A DNA stretch of 64,000 bases from Octopus sinensis (taxonomy: Eukaryota). Made by a program: the position numbers and the translations under genes. Below are positions 3,971 through 64,000 of the stretch, in pieces (the stretch's first letter is position 1; each line of letters begins with the position of its first letter). The notes under the pieces were generated by a model. The model was not told the DNA's origin and did no database searches. It was given only the letters and a program-made list of their open reading frames with translations. The DNA lies in the NCBI RefSeq assembly GCF_006345805.1, contig NC_043017.1, positions 28,644,001 to 28,708,000 of the forward strand, given 5' to 3'.

Positions 3971-4185
3971 ATAAAGTTAATCCGAACAAGAAAGCACAAA
4001 AAAACACAATAACGCGAGGACGTGGAACAGATATAGTATTATTGGACGCTCAGGAAAGAAGGAAAGAAGGAGGGTTTAACGTTTCGAGCGGAGCTCTTCG
4101 TCAGAAACATAGGAGAGGGAAAGATCCAGAGAAGGGAAGACAGAGGGAAAAAAAATCACCAACGGTACACACGCGGTCACATTTT
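3971..4185 (-). mobile_element. ~210 bp dispersed repeat carrying a hammerhead-like motif (putative PLE pseudo-LTR family), copy 1
   Basis: Homologous to 10394-10530, 16810-17010, 41425-41629 and 63652-63869. Confidence 0.75.
4074..4108 (-). ncRNA. Minimal type I hammerhead-like motif with canonical CUGACGA core
   Basis: Minus strand reads GUUU-CUGACGA-A-GAGC(UCC)GCUC-GAA-ACGU-U/AAAC. Stem I is only 4 bp. Confidence 0.55.
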
Positions 4186-9093: not shown

Positions 9094-9216
9094 GTTTCAA
9101 ATTTTGGCACAAGTCCAGTAATTTTAGAGCGGTAAATCGATTCCATCGAACCCCAGTGCTCAACCGGTTTTTATTTTATCGACCCAGTCAGATGAATGTC
9201 AAAGTCGACATCGGCG
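9094..9216 (-). mobile_element. SINE family B fragment
   Basis: Core and tail similarity. Confidence 0.6.
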
Positions 9217-13917: not shown

Positions 13918-14503
13918 TTCCCATTCTTTTCTACTCTAGGTACAAGGCCCGAAATTTTGGGGGAGCAGGCCAATCGATTTGATCCACCCAGTACGCAACT
14001 GGTACTTAATTTATTGACCCCTAAAAGATGAACGGCAAAGTGAACCTCGGCGGAATTTGAACTCAGAACGTAGCGGCAGACGAAATACCTATTTCTTTAT
14101 AACCCACAAAGGGCTAAACACAGAGGGGACAAACAAAGACAGATATAGATATTAAGTCGATTACACCGCCCCCAGTGCGTAACTGGTACTTAATTTATCA
14201 ACCCCGAAAGGATGAACGGCAAAGTCGACCTCGGTGTATTTTGAACTCATAACGTAGCGGTAGACGAAATTCCTATTTCTGTACTACCCACAAGGGGCTA
14301 AACATAGAGGGGACAAACAAAGACAGACGTAGGTATTAAGTCGATTACACCGCCCCCAGTGCGTAACTGGTACTTAATTTATCGACCCCGAAAGGATGAA
14401 CAGCAAAGTCGACCTCGGCGGAATTTGAACTCAGAACGTAGCAGCAGACGAAATACCGTTGAGAATTTCGCTCGGCGTGCAAGCGTTTCTGACACCTCGC
14501 CAC
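13918..14503 (-). mobile_element. SINE family B with a 184-bp internal tandem triplication
   Basis: Head GGCGAGGTGTCAGAAACGCTTGCACGCCGAGCGAAAT; core CCGAGGTCGACTTTGCC.TTCATCCTTTCGGGGTCGAT repeated at 184-bp period (13990, 14174, 14358). Confidence 0.85.
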
Positions 14504-14709
14504 CTTTTTTCCCCATTTCATATTAAAAAGCATGTAGTTTAATTGCAAATTGAATATGTTTTGTTGTTGATATATGAAAGTTTATTCTTTGTTTCTAAAG
14601 AGGTGTGTGTGTTGAGAATATCCTCGAATTGTGAATTAATCTTAAATATTTTAAATATGAAACTGGTATAAACCGTGACCATATAAACACACTTTTCTCT
14701 TTATGAAAA

Positions 14710-14955
14710 CATAGCGGAACTAAATTATTAAAGATTCCGTAGCTTCAAATGATTGAGTGAGGGAGTGAGTGAGTTTGTGCGTAATTGTACAAATAGCTCC
14801 CCTCATCAAAACGTTATAGTCTTTGTATCAAAGCAGATGGTATGCAAATGTTTATTCTGGATTTTTGCTAAACAATTTAATTATTTATTTGTAAGTTTGC
14901 AAAGAAGAAATTGAAATCTAAAGTTGATTATCTGAATGATAGAATTATATATATA
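14710..14955 (+). repeat. Local diverged duplication (partner 17141-17414) containing a candidate 43-nt exon
   Basis: Collinear similarity over ~250 bp; AG|43 nt|GT at 14797-14839 and 17252-17294. Confidence 0.8.
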
Positions 14956-15368
14956 GGTTTCTATGATTAATAGGGGATTAGTTTTTGCTGCACATTTCTT
15001 CATACAGGATCCTGAAGAATATGCCATTATAATATTGGGATGTATTATTGAGATCTTCGTTGGGAGAGAAAATTTTAAGTCATTACAGCAGGATTTCAGA
15101 TAAATTCTGAGTACTTATAATGAGGCAATCATTTACTTTTCCAACATATTGAGGTATCCATTTGTAAGGCACGCATTGGGAGTAAGCTAAATTTCACATC
15201 GATCATGACAACACTACCAATGAGTGTATTACTTGTCGATTCAAGAATAATTGAATAACTAAACTTTTCAAACATTCCAAAATTCGAAACCGCACGCGAG
15301 GTCCTAAAGCATGAATCGAAGGTTCGTATTTAACAGGTCGTAAAAATAATATTCCATCCGATTCATAT

Positions 15369-15430
<62 letters not shown>

Positions 15431-15582
15431 ATAGTTATCGCCATACTAATATGGCATTCTTATAAAAATAAGAAAAAAGCTGTCCGCTTATTAGCTCCAT
15501 GAGGCCATCGCCTTAAGTTAGCTATTTGATACACAAACTGTATCCATATAACCTTCGAACAAGGGAGGTCAGTCGCTCCACA

Positions 15583-15653
15583 CTACTTGACCGGCAGCTA
15601 CAGACGCGTTTCGGAGTATTGCCCCTTTTCAATGCAGCGTAGCCAGCCAGTAG
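15583..15653 (-). ncRNA. Type I hammerhead ribozyme, array copy 1 (U3-A8 variant, minimal palindromic stem III)
   Basis: Minus strand reads GCUGCA-UUGAAAA-GGGG(CAAUA)CUCC-GAA-ACGCGU-C/UGUAGC (core 15597-15638). Stem I extends via UGGCUGGC/GCCGGUCA and CUAC/GUAG. Predicted GUC cleavage between 15603 and 15602. Confidence 0.8.
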
Positions 15654-15944
15654 GTGTCGCTTCCGACAATCTCTGTTCGATGGTTTTATTTACCTAGTTT
15701 CGGTGGAATACATCCACTTGTTTTCAATAATAGAAATATTAAAATAACTAAGTCTCTCTAAAAGAGAACAGCGGCAGCGTTCCCGGAAAATAATAGTTAT
15801 CGCCATACTAATATGGCATTCTTATAAAAATAAGAAAAAAGCTGTCCGCTTATTAGCTCCATGAGGCCATCGCCTTAAGTTAGCTATTTGATACACAAAC
15901 TGTATCCATATAACCTTCGAACAAGGGAGGTCAGTCGCTCCACA

Positions 15945-16015
15945 CTACTTGACCGGCAGCTACAGACGCGTTTCGGAGTATTGCCCCTTTTCAATGCAGC
16001 GTAGCCAGCCAGTAG
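15945..16015 (-). ncRNA. Type I hammerhead ribozyme, array copy 2
   Basis: Same motif, core 15959-16000; predicted cleavage 15965/15964. Confidence 0.8.
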
Positions 16016-16305
16016 GTGTCGCTTCCGACAATCTCTGTTCGATGGTTTTATTTACCTAGTTTCGGTGGAATACATCCACTTGTTTTCAATATAGAAATAT
16101 TAAAATAACTAAGTCTCTCTAAAAGAGAACAGCGGCAGCGTTCCCGGAAAATAATAGTTATCGCCATACTAATATGGCATTCTTATAAAAATAAGAAAAA
16201 AGCTGTCCGCTTATTAGCTCCATGAGGCCATCGCCTTAAGTTAGCTATTTGATACACAAACTGTATCCATATAACCTTCGAACAAGGGAGGTCAGTCGCT
16301 CCACA

Positions 16306-16376
16306 CTACTTGACCGGCAGCTACAGACGCGTTTCGGAGTATTGCCCCTTTTCAATGCAGCGTAGCCAGCCAGTAG
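16306..16376 (-). ncRNA. Type I hammerhead ribozyme, array copy 3
   Basis: Same motif, core 16320-16361; predicted cleavage 16326/16325. Confidence 0.8.
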
Positions 16377-16667
16377 GTGTCGCTTCCGACAATCTCTGTT
16401 CGATGGTTTTATTTACCTAGTTTCGGTGGAATACATCCACTTGTTTTCAATAATAGAAATATTAAAATAACTAAGTCTCTCTAAAAGAGAACAGCGGCAG
16501 CGTTCCCGGAAAATAATAGTTATCGCCATACTAATATGGCATTCTTATAAAAATAAGAAAAAAGCTGTCCGCTTATTAGCTCCATGAGGCCATCGCCTTA
16601 AGTTAGCTATTTGATACACAAACTGTATCCATATAACCTTCGAACAAGGGAGGTCAGTCGCTCCACA

Positions 16668-16738
16668 CTACTTGACCGGCAGCTACAGACGCGTTTCGGA
16701 GTATTGCCCCTTTTCAATGCAGCGTAGCCAGCCAGTAG
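16668..16738 (-). ncRNA. Type I hammerhead ribozyme, array copy 4
   Basis: Same motif, core 16682-16723; predicted cleavage 16688/16687. Confidence 0.8.
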
Positions 16739-16809
16739 GTGTCGCTTCCGACAATCTCTGTTCGATGGTTTTATTTTATATAAATATATGACCCATTTCC
16801 CTCCGGTCA

Positions 16810-17010
16810 TTCAAAATGTGACATTTTTCCCTCTGTTTTCCCTTCTCTGGATCTTGCCTTCTCCTATGTTTCCGACGAAGAGCTCCGCTCGAAACGTTAT
16901 ACCCTGCTTCGTCTTCCCTTCCCTCCTGAGCGTCCAACAATATTATATTTGTTCCACGTTCTCGCGTTCTTGTGTTTTCTCTTTGTGTTTTCATGTTTGG
17001 ATTAACTTTA
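16810..17010 (+). mobile_element. Copy of the ~210 bp hammerhead-like repeat
   Basis: GTTTCCGACGAAGAGCTCCGCTCGAAACGTT at 16868-16898; lies about 30 bp from the end of the 362-bp array. Confidence 0.75.
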
Positions 17011-18999
17011 TATATATAATGTATAGTTCCAGGCTTAAGCGGGAAATACACTTTAAAACATTTCAAACAGATTATGCAGGAGTGCCACACAACTAATGTT
17101 GCTCTTTTAAGCTCATGTAAAGGCAAAAGCCACAAGAAAACATAGTGGAAATAAACGATTAAAGATTAAAGATTTCGTAGCTGGAAATGTTTGAGTGTGT
17201 GAGTGAGTGAGTGGGGGAGTGCGTAATTGTTAAATGAGGTTGTACAAACAGCTTCTCTCATCAAAGTGTTATAGTCTTTGTATCAAAGCAGATGGTAAGC
17301 AAATATTTGTACTGGATTTTTGTTGAACAATTTAATTATTTATTTATAAGTTTGCAAGGAAGAAATTGTAATCTAAAGTTGATTATCTGAATGATATAAT
17401 TATATATATATATAGTTATACGTAATTAGATTGCATATTTCAGAATTTTACCGTTTATAATGGAAAAATTGTTAGTAATATCGATTGGAATTTTAAACTT
17501 GAAAATCATTCCTACTGCTATCAGCAGTGTAGTTTTGTTATCTATGTCGGTAGCAAGTATTTTAAAATTAATATTAATAATTATTTTCAATATAGATTTA
17601 TGACTAAATCGCGGAAGACACCGCGGTATGTATATTTGGTGATCTCGTACAGAAACTTTTGATTTATGGAAGAAAATACGTTCTGGTTGTTTCTTTAAAA
17701 AATCTTGTTTCAGAGATTTTTGGGCATAAATAGCAACTCTTAAATTCTATAAGCTTTTGTAATAGATTGAAAGGAAGAGAACATTCCAACATTTTGAAAT
17801 AAAATATTCATAAGTTTCTCAGTTGAGATTTTTTCCAACAAAATACAATAATCCGCCTGGATCTCTCAATAAATATTTTAGTTTTGCAGAAGGTGCGTTT
17901 GGTATACATCTTTTATAGACTTACCTATTTTTTAGTCGATGTTACACTGAATAAATATAACATTGTCGAGAACGTGGGCGCCAAGAACTTATTTCCTTAT
18001 AAAATATAAATCCATACGTCTTTCATAAAAAAATCTATATGAGGGTGAATATATAAAAATGGAAATTGGTACAATTTCTAAGCTAAAATTCCTAGAAAAT
18101 ATAGTATGTATCAAAATGCAGAATGTTTGAAGTTTATGATACCTTACATATATATATGAATAATTAAACGAATCATAAATGAGAAAGAATGACATATTTA
18201 TTTTTGATTTATAATAATAATACTATTGCCGTATCATGATATCATTTGTTCATAATTTCCGTTCAAAATAAATCATATTTACTCAGAAATAAAGATTAAG
18301 TACGATAAAATCTAAGTAGTATAAATGTGTTATGCTTCTTTTCGGTAACACAATGTTGTATAATAAATTCCAAACACAGTAACGAAGCGACAATATTTAC
18401 TATACATATAATAACATAAATTCTGTTGCTTTTTCAATTCCGTTGATTTTATAGATATAAGAGGGTTATTTTACATTCAGTTATCAAGGTATATAAACAC
18501 CCCTAAAAAGAAGAACAGAACTAACCAACCCTATCTTCAAACCAGATTCTTACTCCGGTGATAACAGTTGAACAATGCAATGCAAACATTACATCAATAT
18601 AAAATGTAGAGCAATCTTCAGGTGCACAAAAATATTGAATTTAATTAAATTCGAATGACTCATTAGTATAATTTTATCCAAAATCACCAAAAGGATAAGA
18701 GGATTATTTTGATTATAATCACCTTATTTTAAATTGTATGGATAATACCATACTAAATTCTGGTGCCTTTGACTTAAGTACCATATCCATCTGAATTTAA
18801 AGATATATATATATGATAGATCGTTAGCCACTACACACATTTTTCTCTCCTTGTTTTTTTCTGTGTCTTTTTCGGCAGAAGAGCGTAGGCTCGAAACATA
18901 AAAGGACTTTTTCAATTCCTGAGCGTCATACTAATACATTTGTTTGTTTTGTACACCACCTGTCTTCTTCTTTTGTTTTTTTCATAAACTCTCCCTATA

Positions 19000-38740: not shown

Positions 38741-38856
38741 AATGCGGATAAATTTCTCTATAAAGCTTATTTTAACGTACCGATCTACTTGGTAAAATTG
38801 TTAATTCATTAATCTAATTAATAAATGTTATCCTTAATTTATATAGATATAGATAT

Positions 38857-39012
38857 AGGCGCAGGAGTGGTTGTGTGGTAAGTAGCTTGCTAACCAACCA
38901 CATGGTTCCGGGTTCAGTCCCACTGCGTGGCATCTTGGGCAAGTGTCTTCTGCTATGCCTTGTGAGTGGATTTGGTAGACGGAAACTGAAAGAAGCCTGT
39001 CGTATATATGTA

Positions 39013-39063
<51 letters not shown>

Positions 39064-39273
39064 CTGTGTTTGTCCCGCTAGCATTGCTTGGCAACCGATG
39101 CTGGTGTGTTTACGTCCCCGTCACTTAGCGCTTCGGCAAAAGAGAGCGATAAAATAAGTACTGGGCTTACAAAGAATAAGTCCCGGGGTCGATTTTTATC
39201 GACTAAAGGCGGTGCTCCAGCATGGCCGACATCAAATGACTGAAACAAGTAAAAGAGTAAAAGAGTTAAGAGT
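38857..39273 (+). mobile_element. SINE family A
   Basis: Full-length copy adjoining the PLE fragment. Confidence 0.9.
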
Positions 39274-40098
39274 ATAGGTTGTGGGGTCCTTTGAAGGAGG
39301 GAAGGGGTAGGTTGGAGAAGATGTGCGAGGATGAGTGGTCGGACTGGAGTCGCCGAAAGGCTCGGAGAATGGTACGTTGGAGGGGCAGGGATGGTAGGTG
39401 AGAGGAAACGAGAGACGGGCAAAGACGGTTGGGTGCTGGGAGAAAGATCAGAGGCACGGTCCACGGAACATGCCCTGGAAATGGCTGTGTGGATAGTGGG
39501 GAGTGGATATCTACGAAGGATGAATTGGCGAGTCATGAGTTGAGATTGAGACTCAAAATCATTGTTGTCAATGCAGAGCCTGCTCAAACGGAAGAATTGA
39601 GAATTGGTGACAGGAAACTTGGTGTGGGTAAGGTGGACGAGAAATTAATCTAGGAGTGTTGGTTGCTGTGCTTGTAGTGGATGGAGGTAGTGAGAGCGGA
39701 GTGTTTTCTGTTGAGAAAAATGTCGAGAAATGCAACGGAAGTTTTGGAAATGGTGCAGGAGAATTCGAGGGCAGGATGGAATTACCGAAGAAAAAGAGGA
39801 AGGCGTCTGGTTTTTCACGGGAGGATGATGTCAGACGGATACAGTGATCAATATAACGACGGAGTGGGAATATTTGGGCCTCAACATACCCAACAAATAG
39901 GTTCGCATAATTGTGGCCCATTCTCGTTCCCATAGCTAATCTCGAGAAATGTCCGTAAAAATCCCCGGCGATAGAGAAGCAGTTGAGGGAGAGAACAAGT
40001 TCGGTCAGACGAAGGAGTGTGGAGTTGTTAGGTTGGCGGTTGAGTCGAAGGTCCAGAGAGTGTTTAAATGGAAGAAGTCCTTTGTTGTGTAAGATCAC
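39274..40098 (-). mobile_element. Penelope-like element reverse transcriptase fragment (decayed)
   Basis: Minus translation LLRLTELVLSLNCFSIAGDFY...AMGTRMGHNYANLFVGYVEAQIF...RYIDH matches PLE RT motifs (G.AMG..M.P.YANLF.G, RYIDD), followed by thumb-like RQFILRRYP. Confidence 0.8.
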
Positions 40099-40505
40099 AC
40101 TCTTTACCCTTTTACTCTTTAACTTGTTTCAGTCATTTGACTGCGGCCATGCTGGAGCACCGCCTTTAGTCGAGCAAATTGACCCCTGGACTTATTCTTT
40201 GTAAGCCCAGTACTTATTCTATCGGTCTCTTTTGCCGAACCGCTAAGTGACGGGGACGTAAACACACCAGCATCGGTTGTCAAGCGATGTTGGAAGGGAC
40301 AAACACAAACACACACACACATATATATATATACATATATACGACAGGCTTCTTTCAGTTTCCGTCTACCAAATCCACTCACAAGGCATTGGCCGGCCCG
40401 GGGCTATAGCAGAAGACACTTGCCCAAGATGCCACGGCGTGGGACTGAACCCGGAATCATGTGGTTGGTTAGCACGCTACTTACCACACAGTCACTCCTG
40501 CGCCT
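40099..40505 (-). mobile_element. SINE family A inserted in PLE
   Basis: Full-length copy splitting the PLE RT. Confidence 0.9.
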
Positions 40506-40529
40506 ATATAATTTTTTTTATATCAGGAG

Positions 40530-41424: not shown

Positions 41425-41629
41425 AAAATATGACCGCGTGTGTACCGTTGGCGATTTTTTTCCCTCTGTCTTCCCTTCTCTGGATCTTTCCTTCTCCTAT
41501 GTTTCCGAGAGCTCCGCTCGAAACGTTAGACCCTCCTTCTTTCCTTCTTCCCTGAGCGTCCAATAATACTATATTTGTTCCACGTCCTCGCGTTGTTGTG
41601 TTTTTTGTGCTTTCTTGTTTGGATTAACT
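41425..41629 (+). mobile_element. Copy of the ~210 bp hammerhead-like repeat (core partly deleted)
   Basis: GTTTCCGAGAGCTCCGCTCGAAACGTT; directly flanks the 5' side of the PLE RT fragments. Confidence 0.75.
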
Positions 41630-41641
41630 AGATAGATAGAC

Positions 41642-51317: not shown

Positions 51318-51708
51318 AGGTGGCGAGATGGCAGAAGCGTTAGCACGCCAGGCGAAATGCTTATCGCTATTTCGTCTGTGTTTACGTTCTAAGTTAAAAT
51401 TCCGCGGAGGTCAATTTTGCTTTTCATCGTTTTGGAGTCTATAAATTAATAACCAGTTACATGCTGCGGTCGATCTAATCTAATCGACTACTCCTTCCCC
51501 CAAATTTAGGGCCTTGTGCATAGAGTCCAAAAGGATAGGGGTTAAGTCGATTAAATCGACTCCTGTTTCTAAATGGTACTTATTTTATCGACTACGAAAT
51601 GATGAAAGGCAAAGTTGAGCTCATAGGAATTTGAACACAGAGCGTAAAAACGGATGCCATGCCGGTAAATACTTTGCCCAGCGTGCTAACGATTCGACCA
51701 GCTCGCCG
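51318..51708. mobile_element. Two SINE family B copies, tail-to-tail inverted
   Basis: Plus copy 51318-~51538, minus copy ~51539-51708. Confidence 0.75.
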
Positions 51709-53468: not shown

Positions 53469-53520
53469 TACATATATTAGTCCAAATATAATTTGTGTTC
53501 TCAACGGTCGATTGGATTCA

Positions 53521-53710
53521 AGGCGGCGAGCTGGCAGAAACGTTAGCACGCCGGGCGAAATGCGTGGCCGTATTTCGTCTGCGCCATACGTTCTGAGTTA
53601 AATTCGCCGATGTCGACTTTGCTTTCATCCTTTCGCGGTCGATGTAATCGACTTAATCCCATTGTTTGTCCTCTCTGTGTTTAGCCTTGTGGTAAGTAAA
53701 GAACTATATA
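53521..53710 (+). mobile_element. SINE family B (indel-rich)
   Basis: GGCGGCGAGCTGGCAGAAACGTTAGCACGCCGGGCGAAATGC head. Confidence 0.8.
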
Positions 53711-53998
53711 TTATTTATTATATATATATATATATATATAGATACCACTCGAGTACTGAAGGTGCAGTGTTTGCTTTGATATAAGCTGAAAATCGTCAGT
53801 TACACCAGCTTGTGTAGATATTGCAGTTCAATAAAAGTATTCACGCACACACATACACACACAAACACACACAGTTACACTCACATAGAAACACCAATAC
53901 ATATATAATATATATAAAATATATATATATATAATATATAATATATATAATATTATATAATATATATATATATTATTATATATATATATGACATGTAT

Positions 53999-59077: not shown

Positions 59078-59411
59078 ACATTATTTACATTATTTACATT
59101 TGACGTGTATTTCTCCTCATCTTCATTATTGTTAACACAACGTTTCGGCTGAAATACCCTCCAGCCTTCATCAGGTGTCTTGAAAAAAATTCAAACCTGG
59201 GTTCCCATCCCTAAGGTATTTTTCGATATTATCATCAACATCATCATCATCATTATTATTATTATTATGCAGGTCTCTGTCTGGAACGATCTCGGAATCT
59301 TGGGGTTGGTAGCCCGCGCTCTTAACCACTACGCCATATGTCCACGAGCATATGGCGTAGCGGTTAAGATGAGGAAAAAAATCCGTCAAATGTCAATAAT
59401 GTAAATAATGT
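59078..59411 (-). mobile_element. tRNA-headed SINE-like element with 3' hammerhead and (TGTAAATAA)n tail, plus head-to-head internally deleted inverted copy
   Basis: Minus 59340-59270: A-box TGGCGTAGTGGTT and degenerate B-box. Hammerhead at 59178-59135. Tail repeats at 59078-59105 are mirrored at 59363-59411. A 21-bp hairpin forms from 59320-59340 and 59349-59369. Confidence 0.65.
59135..59178 (-). ncRNA. Minimal type I hammerhead ribozyme with intact core
   Basis: Minus strand reads ACAC-CUGAUGA-A-GGCUG(GAGGGUAUUU)CAGCC-GAA-ACGU-U/GUGU. Stem I ACAC/GUGU, 5-bp stem II, palindromic AACGUU stem III. Confidence 0.75.
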
Positions 59412-63651: not shown

Positions 63652-63869
63652 TGCGCCTTTCAAAATGTGACCTCGTGTGTACCGTTGGCGATTTTTTCCT
63701 CTGTCTTCCCTTCTCTGGATCTTTCCTTCTCCTATGTTTCCGACGAAGAGCTCCGCTCGAAACGTTAAACCCTCCATCTTCCCTTCTTTCCTGAGCGTCC
63801 AATAACACTATATTTGTTCCACGTCCTCGCGTTGTTGTGTTTTTTTGTGTTTTCTTGTTTGGATTGACT
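63652..63869 (+). mobile_element. Copy of the ~210 bp hammerhead-like repeat
   Basis: GTTTCCGACGAAGAGCTCCGCTCGAAACGTTAAAC at 63736-63770. Confidence 0.75.
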
Positions 63870-64000
63870 ATATATATGCACCGTTACTGAATGTGGTCAA
63901 ATTCTTATTCAATTTAGCTACCTTATTAAGGTGTTTTGCTCCAAAACAAAACGCATAGATCGATCCTGGAATCGAAAGACGGGCTTATGGTTATGAATGC

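What the first reader, a model, noticed from the sequence alone, without database searches (positions are those of the whole stretch)
15428..16776. Near-identical 362-bp tandem array with a hammerhead in every unit: candidate cephalopod retrozyme / circRNA system
Seen: about 3.7 head-to-tail units (362/361/362 bp), almost identical and without a convincing ORF. Each has a complete minus-strand type I hammerhead, with predicted GUC cuts at 15603/15602, 15965/15964, 16326/16325 and 16688/16687. Established: metazoan non-LTR retrozymes are tandem repeats of a few hundred nt with type I hammerheads that self-cleave to unit monomers and circularise, and PLE pseudo-LTRs carry similar minimal hammerheads. 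Inference: a minus-strand transcript would release 361-362 nt monomers (5'-OH, 2',3'-cyclic phosphate) that could be circularised by an RtcB-type ligase and retrotransposed in trans, for example by PLE RT (PLE remnants lie at 39.3-41.4 kb). The near identity implies recent activity. I do not know of this family being described in octopus.
Basis: partly seen in the sequence, partly recalled or inferred. Interest (0 to 1): 0.92.

Follow-up and report, generated by a model that had tools for sequence, protein, structure and literature searches.

The report
Tandem hammerhead-ribozyme repeat (animal retrozyme)
A 362-bp sequence repeated 3.7 times head to tail carries a self-cleaving hammerhead ribozyme motif in every unit, and looks like a very young member of the known animal "retrozyme" class of small circular-RNA mobile elements, unusual only for a compensated base-pair swap in its catalytic core.

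Summary
Positions 15428-16776 are a 362/361/362-bp tandem array of 3.7 copies. The units are identical except for one 1-bp indel and have no credible ORF.

This is the known U3-A8 covariation of the C3-G8 core pair, and it probably contributes to Rfam reporting no hammerhead even at E<=10.

Three independent tests support the motif:
- A structural descriptor gave 0 hits in 200 shuffled windows and in 5000 shuffled units.
- A covariance model built only from four published, in vitro-tested retrozyme hammerheads hits all four copies at 37.4 bits (E about 2e-8). The next best hit scores 12.5 bits.
- The unconstrained fold of a two-unit transcript forms a true double hammerhead, with pair probabilities of 0.83-0.995.

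The 362-nt monomer folds unusually stably (z = -6.5). The array sits inside a (TA)n microsatellite, next to a Penelope-derived minimal-hammerhead repeat. A Penelope RT remnant lies at 39.6-40.1 kb.

Verdict: a non-LTR retrozyme-type element, a new member of a known kind. Cleavage, circular RNA, mobility and host species are untested. Interest is moderate, not 0.92.

The parts
15428..16776 (-). Tandem array, 3.7 units of 362/361/362 bp plus a truncated 261-bp unit. The RNA sense is the minus strand.
   Evidence: TRF. Unit alignment shows a single 1-bp indel. There is no other copy in the window.
16682..16723 (-). Hammerhead copy 1 in RNA order: GCUGCA-UUGAAAA-GGGG CAAUA CUCC-GAAA-CGCG-UC|UGUAGC. 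It cuts between 16688 and 16687.
   Evidence: Descriptor. Covariance model R1, 37.4 bits, E about 2.4e-8, full length with no non-standard pair.
16320..16361 (-). Hammerhead copy 2. It cuts between 16326 and 16325.
15959..16000 (-). Hammerhead copy 3. It cuts between 15965 and 15964.
15597..15638 (-). Hammerhead copy 4. It cuts between 15603 and 15602.
16326..16687 (-). Predicted released monomer 1, 362 nt from cut to cut.
   Evidence: Cut sites.
15965..16325 (-). Predicted released monomer 2, 361 nt. It carries the 1-bp deletion.
15603..15964 (-). Predicted released monomer 3, 362 nt. This is the monomer I folded.
   Evidence: Circular MFE is -118.9 kcal/mol, z = -6.5 against 300 dinucleotide shuffles, 64% of bases paired. 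The MFE contains hammerhead helices I and II.
15365..15427 (.). (AT)31 microsatellite abutting the RNA-sense 3' end of the array. It is the presumed integration target.
   Evidence: TRF and the sequence itself.
16777..16789 (.). TATATAAATATAT, the TA-rich remainder of the target microsatellite at the other array end.
   Evidence: Sequence.
16812..17025 (+). Neighbouring context, not part of the array. This is a copy of a ~230-bp dispersed repeat with a Penelope-type minimal hammerhead at about 16868-16902. The core is mutated here to CCGACGA.
   Evidence: It is 85-89% identical to copies at 63691-63877, 4152-3956 and 41457-41638. The copy at 4152-3956(-) has an intact core, with its cut near 4078.

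Best explanation
This is a non-LTR (metazoan-type) retrozyme: a short non-coding retroelement made of head-to-tail units, each encoding a type I hammerhead ribozyme on the minus strand.

**Proposed cycle.**
1. A minus-strand transcript spans two or more units. The promoter is unknown.
2. The transcript folds so that the palindromic ACGCGU segments of neighbouring hammerheads pair into a 6-bp helix III, forming a double hammerhead.
3. Each active site cuts after GUC. This releases 362/361-nt monomers with 5'-OH and 2',3'-cyclic phosphate ends.
4. The monomer folds into a stable branched rod closed by an extended helix I. A host RtcB-type tRNA ligase circularises it.
5. The lone hammerhead in the circle has only a 1-bp helix III, so re-cleavage is disfavoured.
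6. A Penelope-like RT/GIY-YIG endonuclease, supplied in trans, nicks AT-rich DNA (here a (TA)n microsatellite).
7. That enzyme copies the circle by rolling-circle reverse transcription. The result is a multi-unit array whose ends fall at arbitrary phase.

The catalytic core uses a U3-A8 pair in place of C3-G8.

**Shown here:** array anatomy, motif, fold predictions, integration context and the presence of PLE relics.

**Inferred from the literature on the family:** cleavage, ligation, reverse transcription and mobilisation.
For: **Array anatomy.** Units are identical apart from one indel. GC is 41.4% against 33.4% for the window.

**Hammerhead architecture.** It has a 6-bp helix I, a 4-bp helix II starting with G10.1-C11.1, a 5-nt loop 2, GAAA, A15.1-U16.1 closing the palindrome CGCG, and C17. 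No such motif appeared in 200 shuffled windows or 5000 shuffled units.

**Independent model.** A covariance model was built only from the coral, mussel and two axolotl retrozyme hammerheads taken from the supplement of PMC7229834. It finds the four copies full length at 37.4 bits, E about 2.4e-8. The next best hit in the window scores 12.5 bits.

**Core variant is known.** The only two departures from the core consensus are exactly the compensatory U3-A8 pair. That pair occurs naturally, and covarying nucleotides at these two positions were reported active in vitro (PMC3088659; PMC4209133). A C3G/G8C swap partially restores cleavage in a PLE hammerhead (PMC11167929).

**Double hammerhead.** The unconstrained MFE of a 487-nt two-hammerhead transcript forms it, with swapped helices I. 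The ACGCGU/ACGCGU pair probabilities are 0.83-0.995. The cofolded isolated domains reach -63.7 kcal/mol against 2 x -28.8.

**Monomer stability.** z = -6.5.

**Integration context.** Both array ends lie in A/T-rich parts of the unit and abut a TA microsatellite. PLE endonucleases prefer AT-rich DNA or (TA)n, and PLE RT initiates internally on its template (PMC11167929; PMC8557442).

**PLE relics in the window.** Five copies of a repeat with a minimal hammerhead are present, plus an RT remnant.

**Published properties of the class.** Units are 170-400 nt, tandem, low in GC and highly self-paired. Ligation by RtcB was shown in vitro, and 75% of families have at most 7 units (PMC7229834; preprint 10.64898/2026.07.22.740005).
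Against: - All four hammerheads are identical, so there is no covariation within the family. I found no second locus or relative.
- No Rfam hammerhead model reports the motif.
- A U3-A8 core may cleave more slowly than C3-G8.
- There are no expression data and no promoter was identified.
- The RNA sense strand has T6 and T5 runs that would stop RNA polymerase III.
- The unit shows no sequence similarity to the PLE-derived repeats or the RT remnant in the window. No intact PLE is present: Pfam found no RT or endonuclease in the 150 longest ORFs.
- Near identity of the units could partly reflect assembly or polishing.
Confidence: 0.75

Rival explanations
1. This is a hammerhead-bearing minisatellite that arose and is kept homogeneous at the DNA level by unequal crossing-over, slippage or gene conversion. 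The ribozyme would be a relic or incidental, with no circular-RNA or retrotransposition cycle today.
For: Only one locus is seen. There is no expression evidence. The core departs from the consensus and Rfam does not report it. The 2026 preprint itself invokes local amplification by unequal crossover for such arrays.
Against: The only two core changes are exactly compensatory. All helices are intact, the loop is palindromic and the long-range double hammerhead is preserved. That pattern is not expected of a decaying relic. The array also sits as a discrete block inside a TA microsatellite with ends at arbitrary phase, as an insertion would.
Confidence: 0.12
2. This is part of a Penelope-like element: tandem pseudo-LTRs of a PLE whose ORF has been lost or lies elsewhere, rather than an independent retrozyme family.
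For: PLE relics surround it. Retrozymes and PLE pLTRs are phylogenetically related in Xenopus. The U3-A8 core was first seen in PLE minimal hammerheads.
Against: - There is no RT or endonuclease coding sequence in or beside the array.
- The unit has no similarity to the window's PLE remnant or minimal-hammerhead repeats.
- Its hammerhead has the canonical retrozyme architecture, with a 6-bp helix I and a 4-bp helix II. The PLE minimal type has a long helix II, a bulged base and a 4-5-bp helix I, and that type is what the neighbouring repeats carry.
Confidence: 0.07
3. The copy number or near-identity is an assembly artefact, caused by collapse, expansion or polishing of a repeat.
For: The units are essentially identical. 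The only difference is a 1-bp change in an A/T-rich stretch, which is typical of polishing noise.
Against: The array has unique, well-defined junctions on both sides. Even one and a fraction units would still carry the ribozyme. This rival concerns copy number, not what the element is.
Confidence: 0.05
4. The resemblance to a hammerhead is due to chance.
For: There is no Rfam hit.
Against: There were 0 hits in about 25.6 Mb of shuffled sequence (both strands) and 0 of 5000 shuffled units. The independent covariance model scores 37.4 bits.
Confidence: 0.01

Closest known systems
Metazoan non-LTR retrozymes (Cervera & de la Pena 2020, PMC7229834), especially the Mytilus galloprovincialis Mg353 element
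   Same: - Tandem units of about 350 bp, low GC, no ORF and no LTRs.
- One type I hammerhead per unit, with a 6-bp helix I ending ...CA, a 4-bp helix II, a 5-nt loop 2 and GAAAC-palindrome-GUC|UG.
- The mussel loop 3 is CGCGCG; here it is CGCG.
- The predicted monomer RNA is highly self-paired.
   Different: - The core is U3-A8 instead of C3-G8. The published screens kept only CUGANGA cores.
- The unit sequence is unrelated.
- Expression and circularity are shown for the mussel, coral and axolotl elements but not here.
Newt satellite 2 and ASBVd double hammerheads (Epstein & Gall 1987; Forster et al. 1988, as reviewed in PMC6155905)
   Same: Helix III is too short to be stable in a single motif. 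Two tandem copies are predicted to pair into an extended helix III and cleave as a dimer.
   Different: Newt satellite 2 forms very large arrays. ASBVd is an infectious RNA. Here the array is a short genomic one and its activity is untested.
Penelope-like element pLTR minimal hammerheads, including the U3-A8 variant family of Schistosoma mansoni Cercyon (PMC4209133)
   Same: Same U3-A8 core covariation, same palindromic positions around helix III, and the same association with PLE-rich, AT-microsatellite contexts.
   Different: PLE minimal hammerheads have a long helix II (7-8 bp), a bulged base and a short helix I. They mostly occur singly, next to or within an RT-EN element. Examples in this window lie near 4078 and at 59135-59176. 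The array motif instead has the canonical 6/4-bp architecture and no ORF.
Plant LTR retrozymes (PMC4918200)
   Same: They are non-autonomous, hammerhead-flanked and proposed to spread through circular RNA intermediates.
   Different: Plant elements use type III hammerheads inside LTRs, have PBS and PPT, are 600-1000 nt long with GC above 55%, and are mobilised by Gypsy-type RT.

Membership tests
Hammerhead ribozyme, type I | Three helices around the core in type I order: helix I strand, core box, helix II hairpin, GAAA, helix III, UH cut site, helix I strand. | tested here: met
   Helix I 6/6 pairs, helix II 4/4 pairs including G10.1-C11.1, and A15.1-U16.1 closing CGCG. The MFE of the isolated domain and of the whole monomer reproduces helices I and II.
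Hammerhead ribozyme, type I | Conserved core C3 U4 G5 A6 N7 G8 A9 / G12 A13 A14 / A15.1-U16.1 / H17. | tested here: inconclusive
   Every fixed core position matches except C3 and G8. Positions 3 and 8 are U and A, not C and G. This keeps the known 3-8 Watson-Crick pair. The covariation is documented in nature, and covarying nucleotides at these positions were reported active in vitro (PMC3088659; PMC4209133). The strict consensus is still not met.
Hammerhead ribozyme, type I | Recognised by curated covariance models. | tested here: not met
   There is no Rfam hammerhead hit at the gathering score or at E<=10. A model built from four in vitro-tested retrozyme hammerheads does hit, at 37.4 bits and E about 2e-8.
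Hammerhead ribozyme, type I | Mg2+-dependent self-cleavage after H17. | not testable with these tools
   This needs in vitro transcription of one-unit and two-unit constructs.
Metazoan non-LTR retrozyme | Head-to-tail repeats of about 150-450 bp, with at least two consecutive units each carrying a complete type I hammerhead. | tested here: met
   The period is 362 bp and four consecutive hammerheads are present. The criterion comes from PMC7229834 and the 2026 preprint.
Metazoan non-LTR retrozyme | Low GC (below 45-50%), no ORF, no LTR, PBS or PPT. | tested here: met
   GC is 41.4%. The longest open frame is 55 codons and has no homologue. The flanks are a microsatellite and unrelated repeats. 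PBS and PPT motifs were not searched for specifically.
Metazoan non-LTR retrozyme | The monomer RNA is predicted to be highly self-paired. | tested here: met
   Circular MFE is -118.9 kcal/mol, z = -6.5, with 64% of bases paired.
Metazoan non-LTR retrozyme | Expressed as linear and circular monomer RNAs. | not testable with these tools
   No transcriptome of the source organism is available here.
Metazoan non-LTR retrozyme | Multiple dispersed genomic copies (mobile element). | not testable with these tools
   Only 64 kb is available and it holds one locus. Public collections searchable here returned nothing.
Penelope-like element (pLTR) | The repeat flanks, or is contiguous with, an RT plus GIY-YIG ORF. 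| tested here: not met
   There is no RT or endonuclease domain in or next to the array. The nearest RT remnant is 23 kb away and unrelated in sequence.
Classical satellite DNA | Long homogeneous arrays of hundreds to thousands of units. | tested here: not met
   There are 3.7 units with unique junctions on both sides.

The most novel reading that the evidence does not exclude
A currently active retrozyme family may exist, possibly the first in a cephalopod if the window is from one. Its fully tertiary-stabilised type I hammerhead would run on a U3-A8 core. Screens that demand CUGANGA, or that rely on Rfam models, would then systematically miss such families, and animal retrozyme censuses would be undercounts. 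The locus would also offer a natural test of how replaceable the C3-G8 pair is in vivo.
Probability: 0.4. Interest if true: 0.55.

Novelty: new member of a known kind. Interest (0 to 1): 0.4.

Why it matters
If it is active, the element extends hammerhead-made circular RNAs to another animal lineage. It would also provide a very young, clean locus with identical units and clear junctions in a (TA)n target. Such a locus is useful for studying how retrozyme circles are copied and integrated, presumably by Penelope-like enzymes.

There is a practical lesson for annotation. This hammerhead has textbook architecture yet is not reported by Rfam, nor would it pass consensus-core descriptors, because of one compensated base-pair swap. 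Surveys should allow U3-A8.

Otherwise it is an ordinary example of a class described in 2020.

Tried and rejected
- **Rfam.** Scans at the gathering score and at E<=10 gave no hammerhead or any other ribozyme on either strand. The only hits were spurious microRNA-like matches to the (AT)n tract.
- **Alternative register.** GCUACG + CUGCAUUGA fails as a hammerhead. The canonical-core descriptor gives no hit in the array.
- **tRNA-like or SINE-like Pol III origin.** ARAGORN finds nothing. The bacterial promoter scan is irrelevant here.
- **Other copies in the window.** None.
- **Relatives elsewhere.**
  - Exact-ORF look-ups for four array or junction ORFs found nothing.
  - A protein search with the 55-codon frame over the ribozyme found nothing.
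  - The family-specific DNA pattern had 0 hits in metagenome and viral contigs.
  - A general U3-A8 type I pattern gave 44 metagenome hits, which seemed to me about what chance would give. Only one (L010) passes the helix tests, and it is a single motif, not a tandem.
- **Pfam.** Scanning the 150 longest ORFs of the window found no RT or endonuclease. The RT remnant was recognised only through homologues.
- **Species identification.**
  - The homologue loci share no DNA with the window.
  - Repeat k-mers are absent from the paper library.
- **MAFFT alignment.** Aligning the window motif with the published ones misplaced the 3' strand, so I tabulated the pairs by hand-set segments.

Full report
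**1. The observation**

Tandem Repeats Finder reports an array at 15427-16776 with period 362, 3.7 copies and 99% matches. It lies directly after an (AT)31 microsatellite at 15365-15427. Cutting the array at a fixed anchor gives units of 362, 361 and 362 bp and a truncated last unit of 261 bp. All aligned positions are identical except one missing A in the second unit.

The unit has 41.4% GC against 33.4% for the window. The longest stop-to-stop frame in the array is 55 codons. That frame has no relative among 5.8 billion proteins. The array, its near identity and the lack of an ORF are confirmed.

**2. The hammerhead**

Rfam gives no hammerhead at the gathering score or at E<=10 with permissive filters. 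The minus strand reads:

...CUGGC UAC GCUGCA UUGAAAA GGGG CAAUA CUCC GAAA CGCG UC|UGUAGC U GCCGG...

This is a type I hammerhead with these parts:
- a 6-bp helix I (GCUGCA/UGUAGC) that continues beyond a UAC/U internal loop;
- a 4-bp helix II that opens with G10.1-C11.1;
- a 5-nt loop 2;
- G12 A13 A14;
- an A15.1-U16.1 pair closing the palindromic tetraloop CGCG;
- C17 as the cut site.

The box that should read CUGANGA reads UUGAAAA, so position 3 is U and position 8 is A. C3 and G8 form a Watson-Crick pair in the active ribozyme. [quoted passage not shown] It was also found in about 1,300 Penelope-associated minimal hammerheads of Schistosoma mansoni (PMC4209133). [quoted passage not shown]

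**3. Is it more than chance?**

It found nothing in 200 dinucleotide-shuffled copies of the window or in 5000 shuffled units.

As a test independent of my descriptor, I took the four retrozyme hammerheads that were tested in vitro, from the supplement of PMC7229834 (coral Amil224, mussel Mg353, axolotl Ax353 and Ax330). I built a covariance model from them alone and searched the window with filters off.

| Hit | Score | Note |
|---|---|---|
| Four array copies | 37.4 bits, E about 2.4e-8 | Full-length matches, no non-standard pair |
| Next best, 59135-59176(-) | 12.5 bits | A Penelope-type minimal hammerhead |

Segment by segment, the window motif has the same layout as the published ones: helix I 6/6, helix II 4/4, a palindromic loop 3 and UC before the cut.

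**4. Fold predictions**

- **Isolated domain.** The 74-nt hammerhead domain folds into helix I, the UAC/U internal loop, the helix I extension and helix II.
- **Two domains cofolded.** They pair through ACGCGU/ACGCGU, at -63.7 kcal/mol against 2 x -28.8.
- **Two-hammerhead transcript.** The unconstrained MFE of a 487-nt transcript is a genuine double hammerhead. The two ACGCGU segments, 362 nt apart, pair with probabilities of 0.83-0.995, and the helix I strands are exchanged between copies as the dimer topology requires.
- **Cut-to-cut monomer.** The 362-nt circle has an MFE of -118.9 kcal/mol. Shuffles average -84.0 (sd 5.3), so z = -6.5 with 0 of 300 shuffles as low. 64% of bases are paired, and hammerhead helices I and II are part of the MFE.

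This matches the published logic for metazoan type I hammerheads with a 1-2-bp helix III and a palindromic loop. They cleave efficiently only when two copies are present, which protects the monomeric circle (PMC4209133; PMC6155905; PMC7229834).

**5. Surroundings**

The unit occurs nowhere else in the window. The array lies inside a TA microsatellite:
- on the left, (AT)31 abuts AATAATAGTT...;
- on the right...GGTTTTATTT abuts TATATAAATATAT.

Both junctions fall in A/T-rich parts of the unit, at arbitrary phase relative to the ribozyme.

From about 16812 to 17025 the plus strand carries a copy of a ~230-bp dispersed repeat. Other copies are at 63691-63877, 41457-41638, 4152-3956(-) and 10526-10397(-), at 72-89% identity. 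Most of these copies also adjoin TA, TACA or TAGA microsatellite runs. The repeat carries a Penelope-type minimal hammerhead (GUUU CUGACGA A GAGC UCC GCUC GAAA CG UU|AAAC). The core is intact at about 4078 and mutated to CCGACGA in the flank copy.

So the window holds both hammerhead classes that were distinguished in coral (legend S1):
- the canonical 6/4-bp type, in ORF-less tandem repeats;
- the minimal type, in PLE-derived sequences.

PLE endonucleases prefer AT-rich DNA or (TA)n, and PLE reverse transcriptase starts internally on its template without needing homology to the target (PMC11167929; PMC8557442). This fits an array integrated in a TA repeat.

Pfam sees no RT or endonuclease in the 150 longest open frames. 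However, ORF 39571-40128(-) has 28 homologues (best E 2.8e-29) carrying RVT_1 and HTH_animal. In homologue locus L045, the only homologue locus whose neighbouring ORFs I scanned, the next ORF has a GIY-YIG domain.

**6. What it most likely is and how it works**

The best-supported reading is a non-LTR retrozyme, and I give it a confidence of 0.75. The cycle I propose is:
1. minus-strand transcription through at least two units;
2. double-hammerhead cleavage after GUC;
3. release of 362/361-nt monomers;
4. circularisation by an RtcB-type ligase (shown in vitro for axolotl elements; PMC7229834);
5. rolling-circle reverse transcription and integration in AT-rich DNA by a PLE enzyme supplied in trans. 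The 2026 preprint 10.64898/2026.07.22.740005 argues that animal retrozymes are non-autonomous PLE derivatives.

Shown here are the anatomy, the motif, the predicted folds, the target context and the PLE relics. Cleavage, circles, mobilisation and the promoter are all inferred.

Zero substitutions across 1.35 kb argue for a very recent origin. The neighbouring repeat copies are only 72-89% identical to their relatives. Rolling-circle copying gives identical units at birth. Gene conversion or assembly polishing could also contribute to the identity.

**7. Rivals**

| Rival | Confidence | Main argument |
|---|---|---|
| DNA-level minisatellite with a relic ribozyme | 0.12 | Hard to reconcile with a core whose only two changes are compensatory and with intact long-range dimer pairing |
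| PLE pLTR fragment | 0.07 | No ORF, no similarity to the PLE relics, and not the PLE-type hammerhead |
| Assembly artefact in copy number | 0.05 | Concerns copy number only, not what the element is |
| Chance motif | 0.01 | Effectively excluded |

**8. Novelty**

Type I hammerheads in tandem repeats have been known since newt satellite 2. The retrozyme concept for animals dates from 2020 and includes a mollusc, the mussel.

In the paper library I found no paper linking hammerheads or retrozymes to a cephalopod. I also could not verify that the window is cephalopod. Octopus vulgaris is reported to have recently active Penelope families (PMC13282606), so a partner would exist if the host is an octopus.

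The U3-A8 core in a canonical, tandem retrozyme hammerhead is unusual. The published coral hammerhead alignments kept only motifs with the CUGANGA core, and Rfam misses this motif here, so such families may be under-counted. I rate the finding as a new member of a known kind, with interest 0.4.

**9. Limits**

- There is one independent sequence only, so no covariation test within the family is possible.
- No transcript data are available.
- No genome-wide copy count is possible from 64 kb.
- E-values from the home-made covariance model are rough.

Noticed in passing
window 16812-17025(+), 63691-63877(+), 41457-41638(+), 4152-3956(-), 10526-10397(-): A ~230-bp dispersed repeat family carries a Penelope-type minimal hammerhead (CUGACGA...GAAACGUU). 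Most copies adjoin TA, TACA or TAGA microsatellite runs. Only the copy with its cut near 4078 keeps an intact core. Three of the others, including the one beside the array, read CCGACGA; the 41457 copy has lost part of the box. The family looks like a solo-pLTR or SINE-like PLE derivative.
   Followed up: partly
window 59135-59176(-): A second, different PLE-type minimal hammerhead is present: GACAC CUGAUGA A GGCUGGAG GGUA UUUCAGCC GAAA CG UU|GUGUU. It has an 8-bp helix II and a bulged A. It sits between the two arms of a 46-bp inverted repeat (59078-59123 and 59366-59411).
   Followed up: partly
window 39276-40128(-), with 38854-39275 and 40099-40519: A degenerate Penelope-like RT remnant is present. 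Pfam does not detect it, but it has homologues at E 3e-29 that carry RVT_1 and HTH_animal; in the one homologue locus examined the RT ORF is followed by a GIY-YIG ORF. The remnant is bracketed by inverted copies of a ~420-bp repeat that occurs at least 9 times in the window.
   Followed up: partly
window 14703-14955 and 17134-17410: Two direct repeats, 82% identical and about 260 bp long, lie on either side of the array region. Both end in TA runs. They could be copies of an interspersed repeat or an old local duplication. No other copy is in the window.
   Followed up: no
window 14000-14457: A 184-bp unit is repeated 2.5 times at 89% identity. Related dispersed copies lie near 9133, 21018, 24244, 51318-51707 and 53520-53712. 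It looks like a SINE family, but ARAGORN finds no tRNA in 12-19 kb.
   Followed up: no
L010 255-300(+) (metagenome contig Ga0049105_1110516): A single U3-A8 type I hammerhead-like motif with a palindromic CCGG loop 3 (GCCA UUGAAAA GUCC AUUACC GGAC GAAA CCGG UC|UGGC) lies in an unrelated contig. It is not in a tandem repeat, and it was the only one of 44 pattern hits to pass the helix tests.
   Followed up: partly
window 15440-15455 and equivalents in each unit: The RNA-sense 3' end of the array lies 12 nt after a perfect 6-bp hairpin (GCCAUA UUAG UAUGGC). The sense strand also has T6 and T5 runs about 125 nt downstream of each cut site, which would terminate RNA polymerase III. Multimeric transcripts therefore probably need Pol II or read-through.
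   Followed up: no
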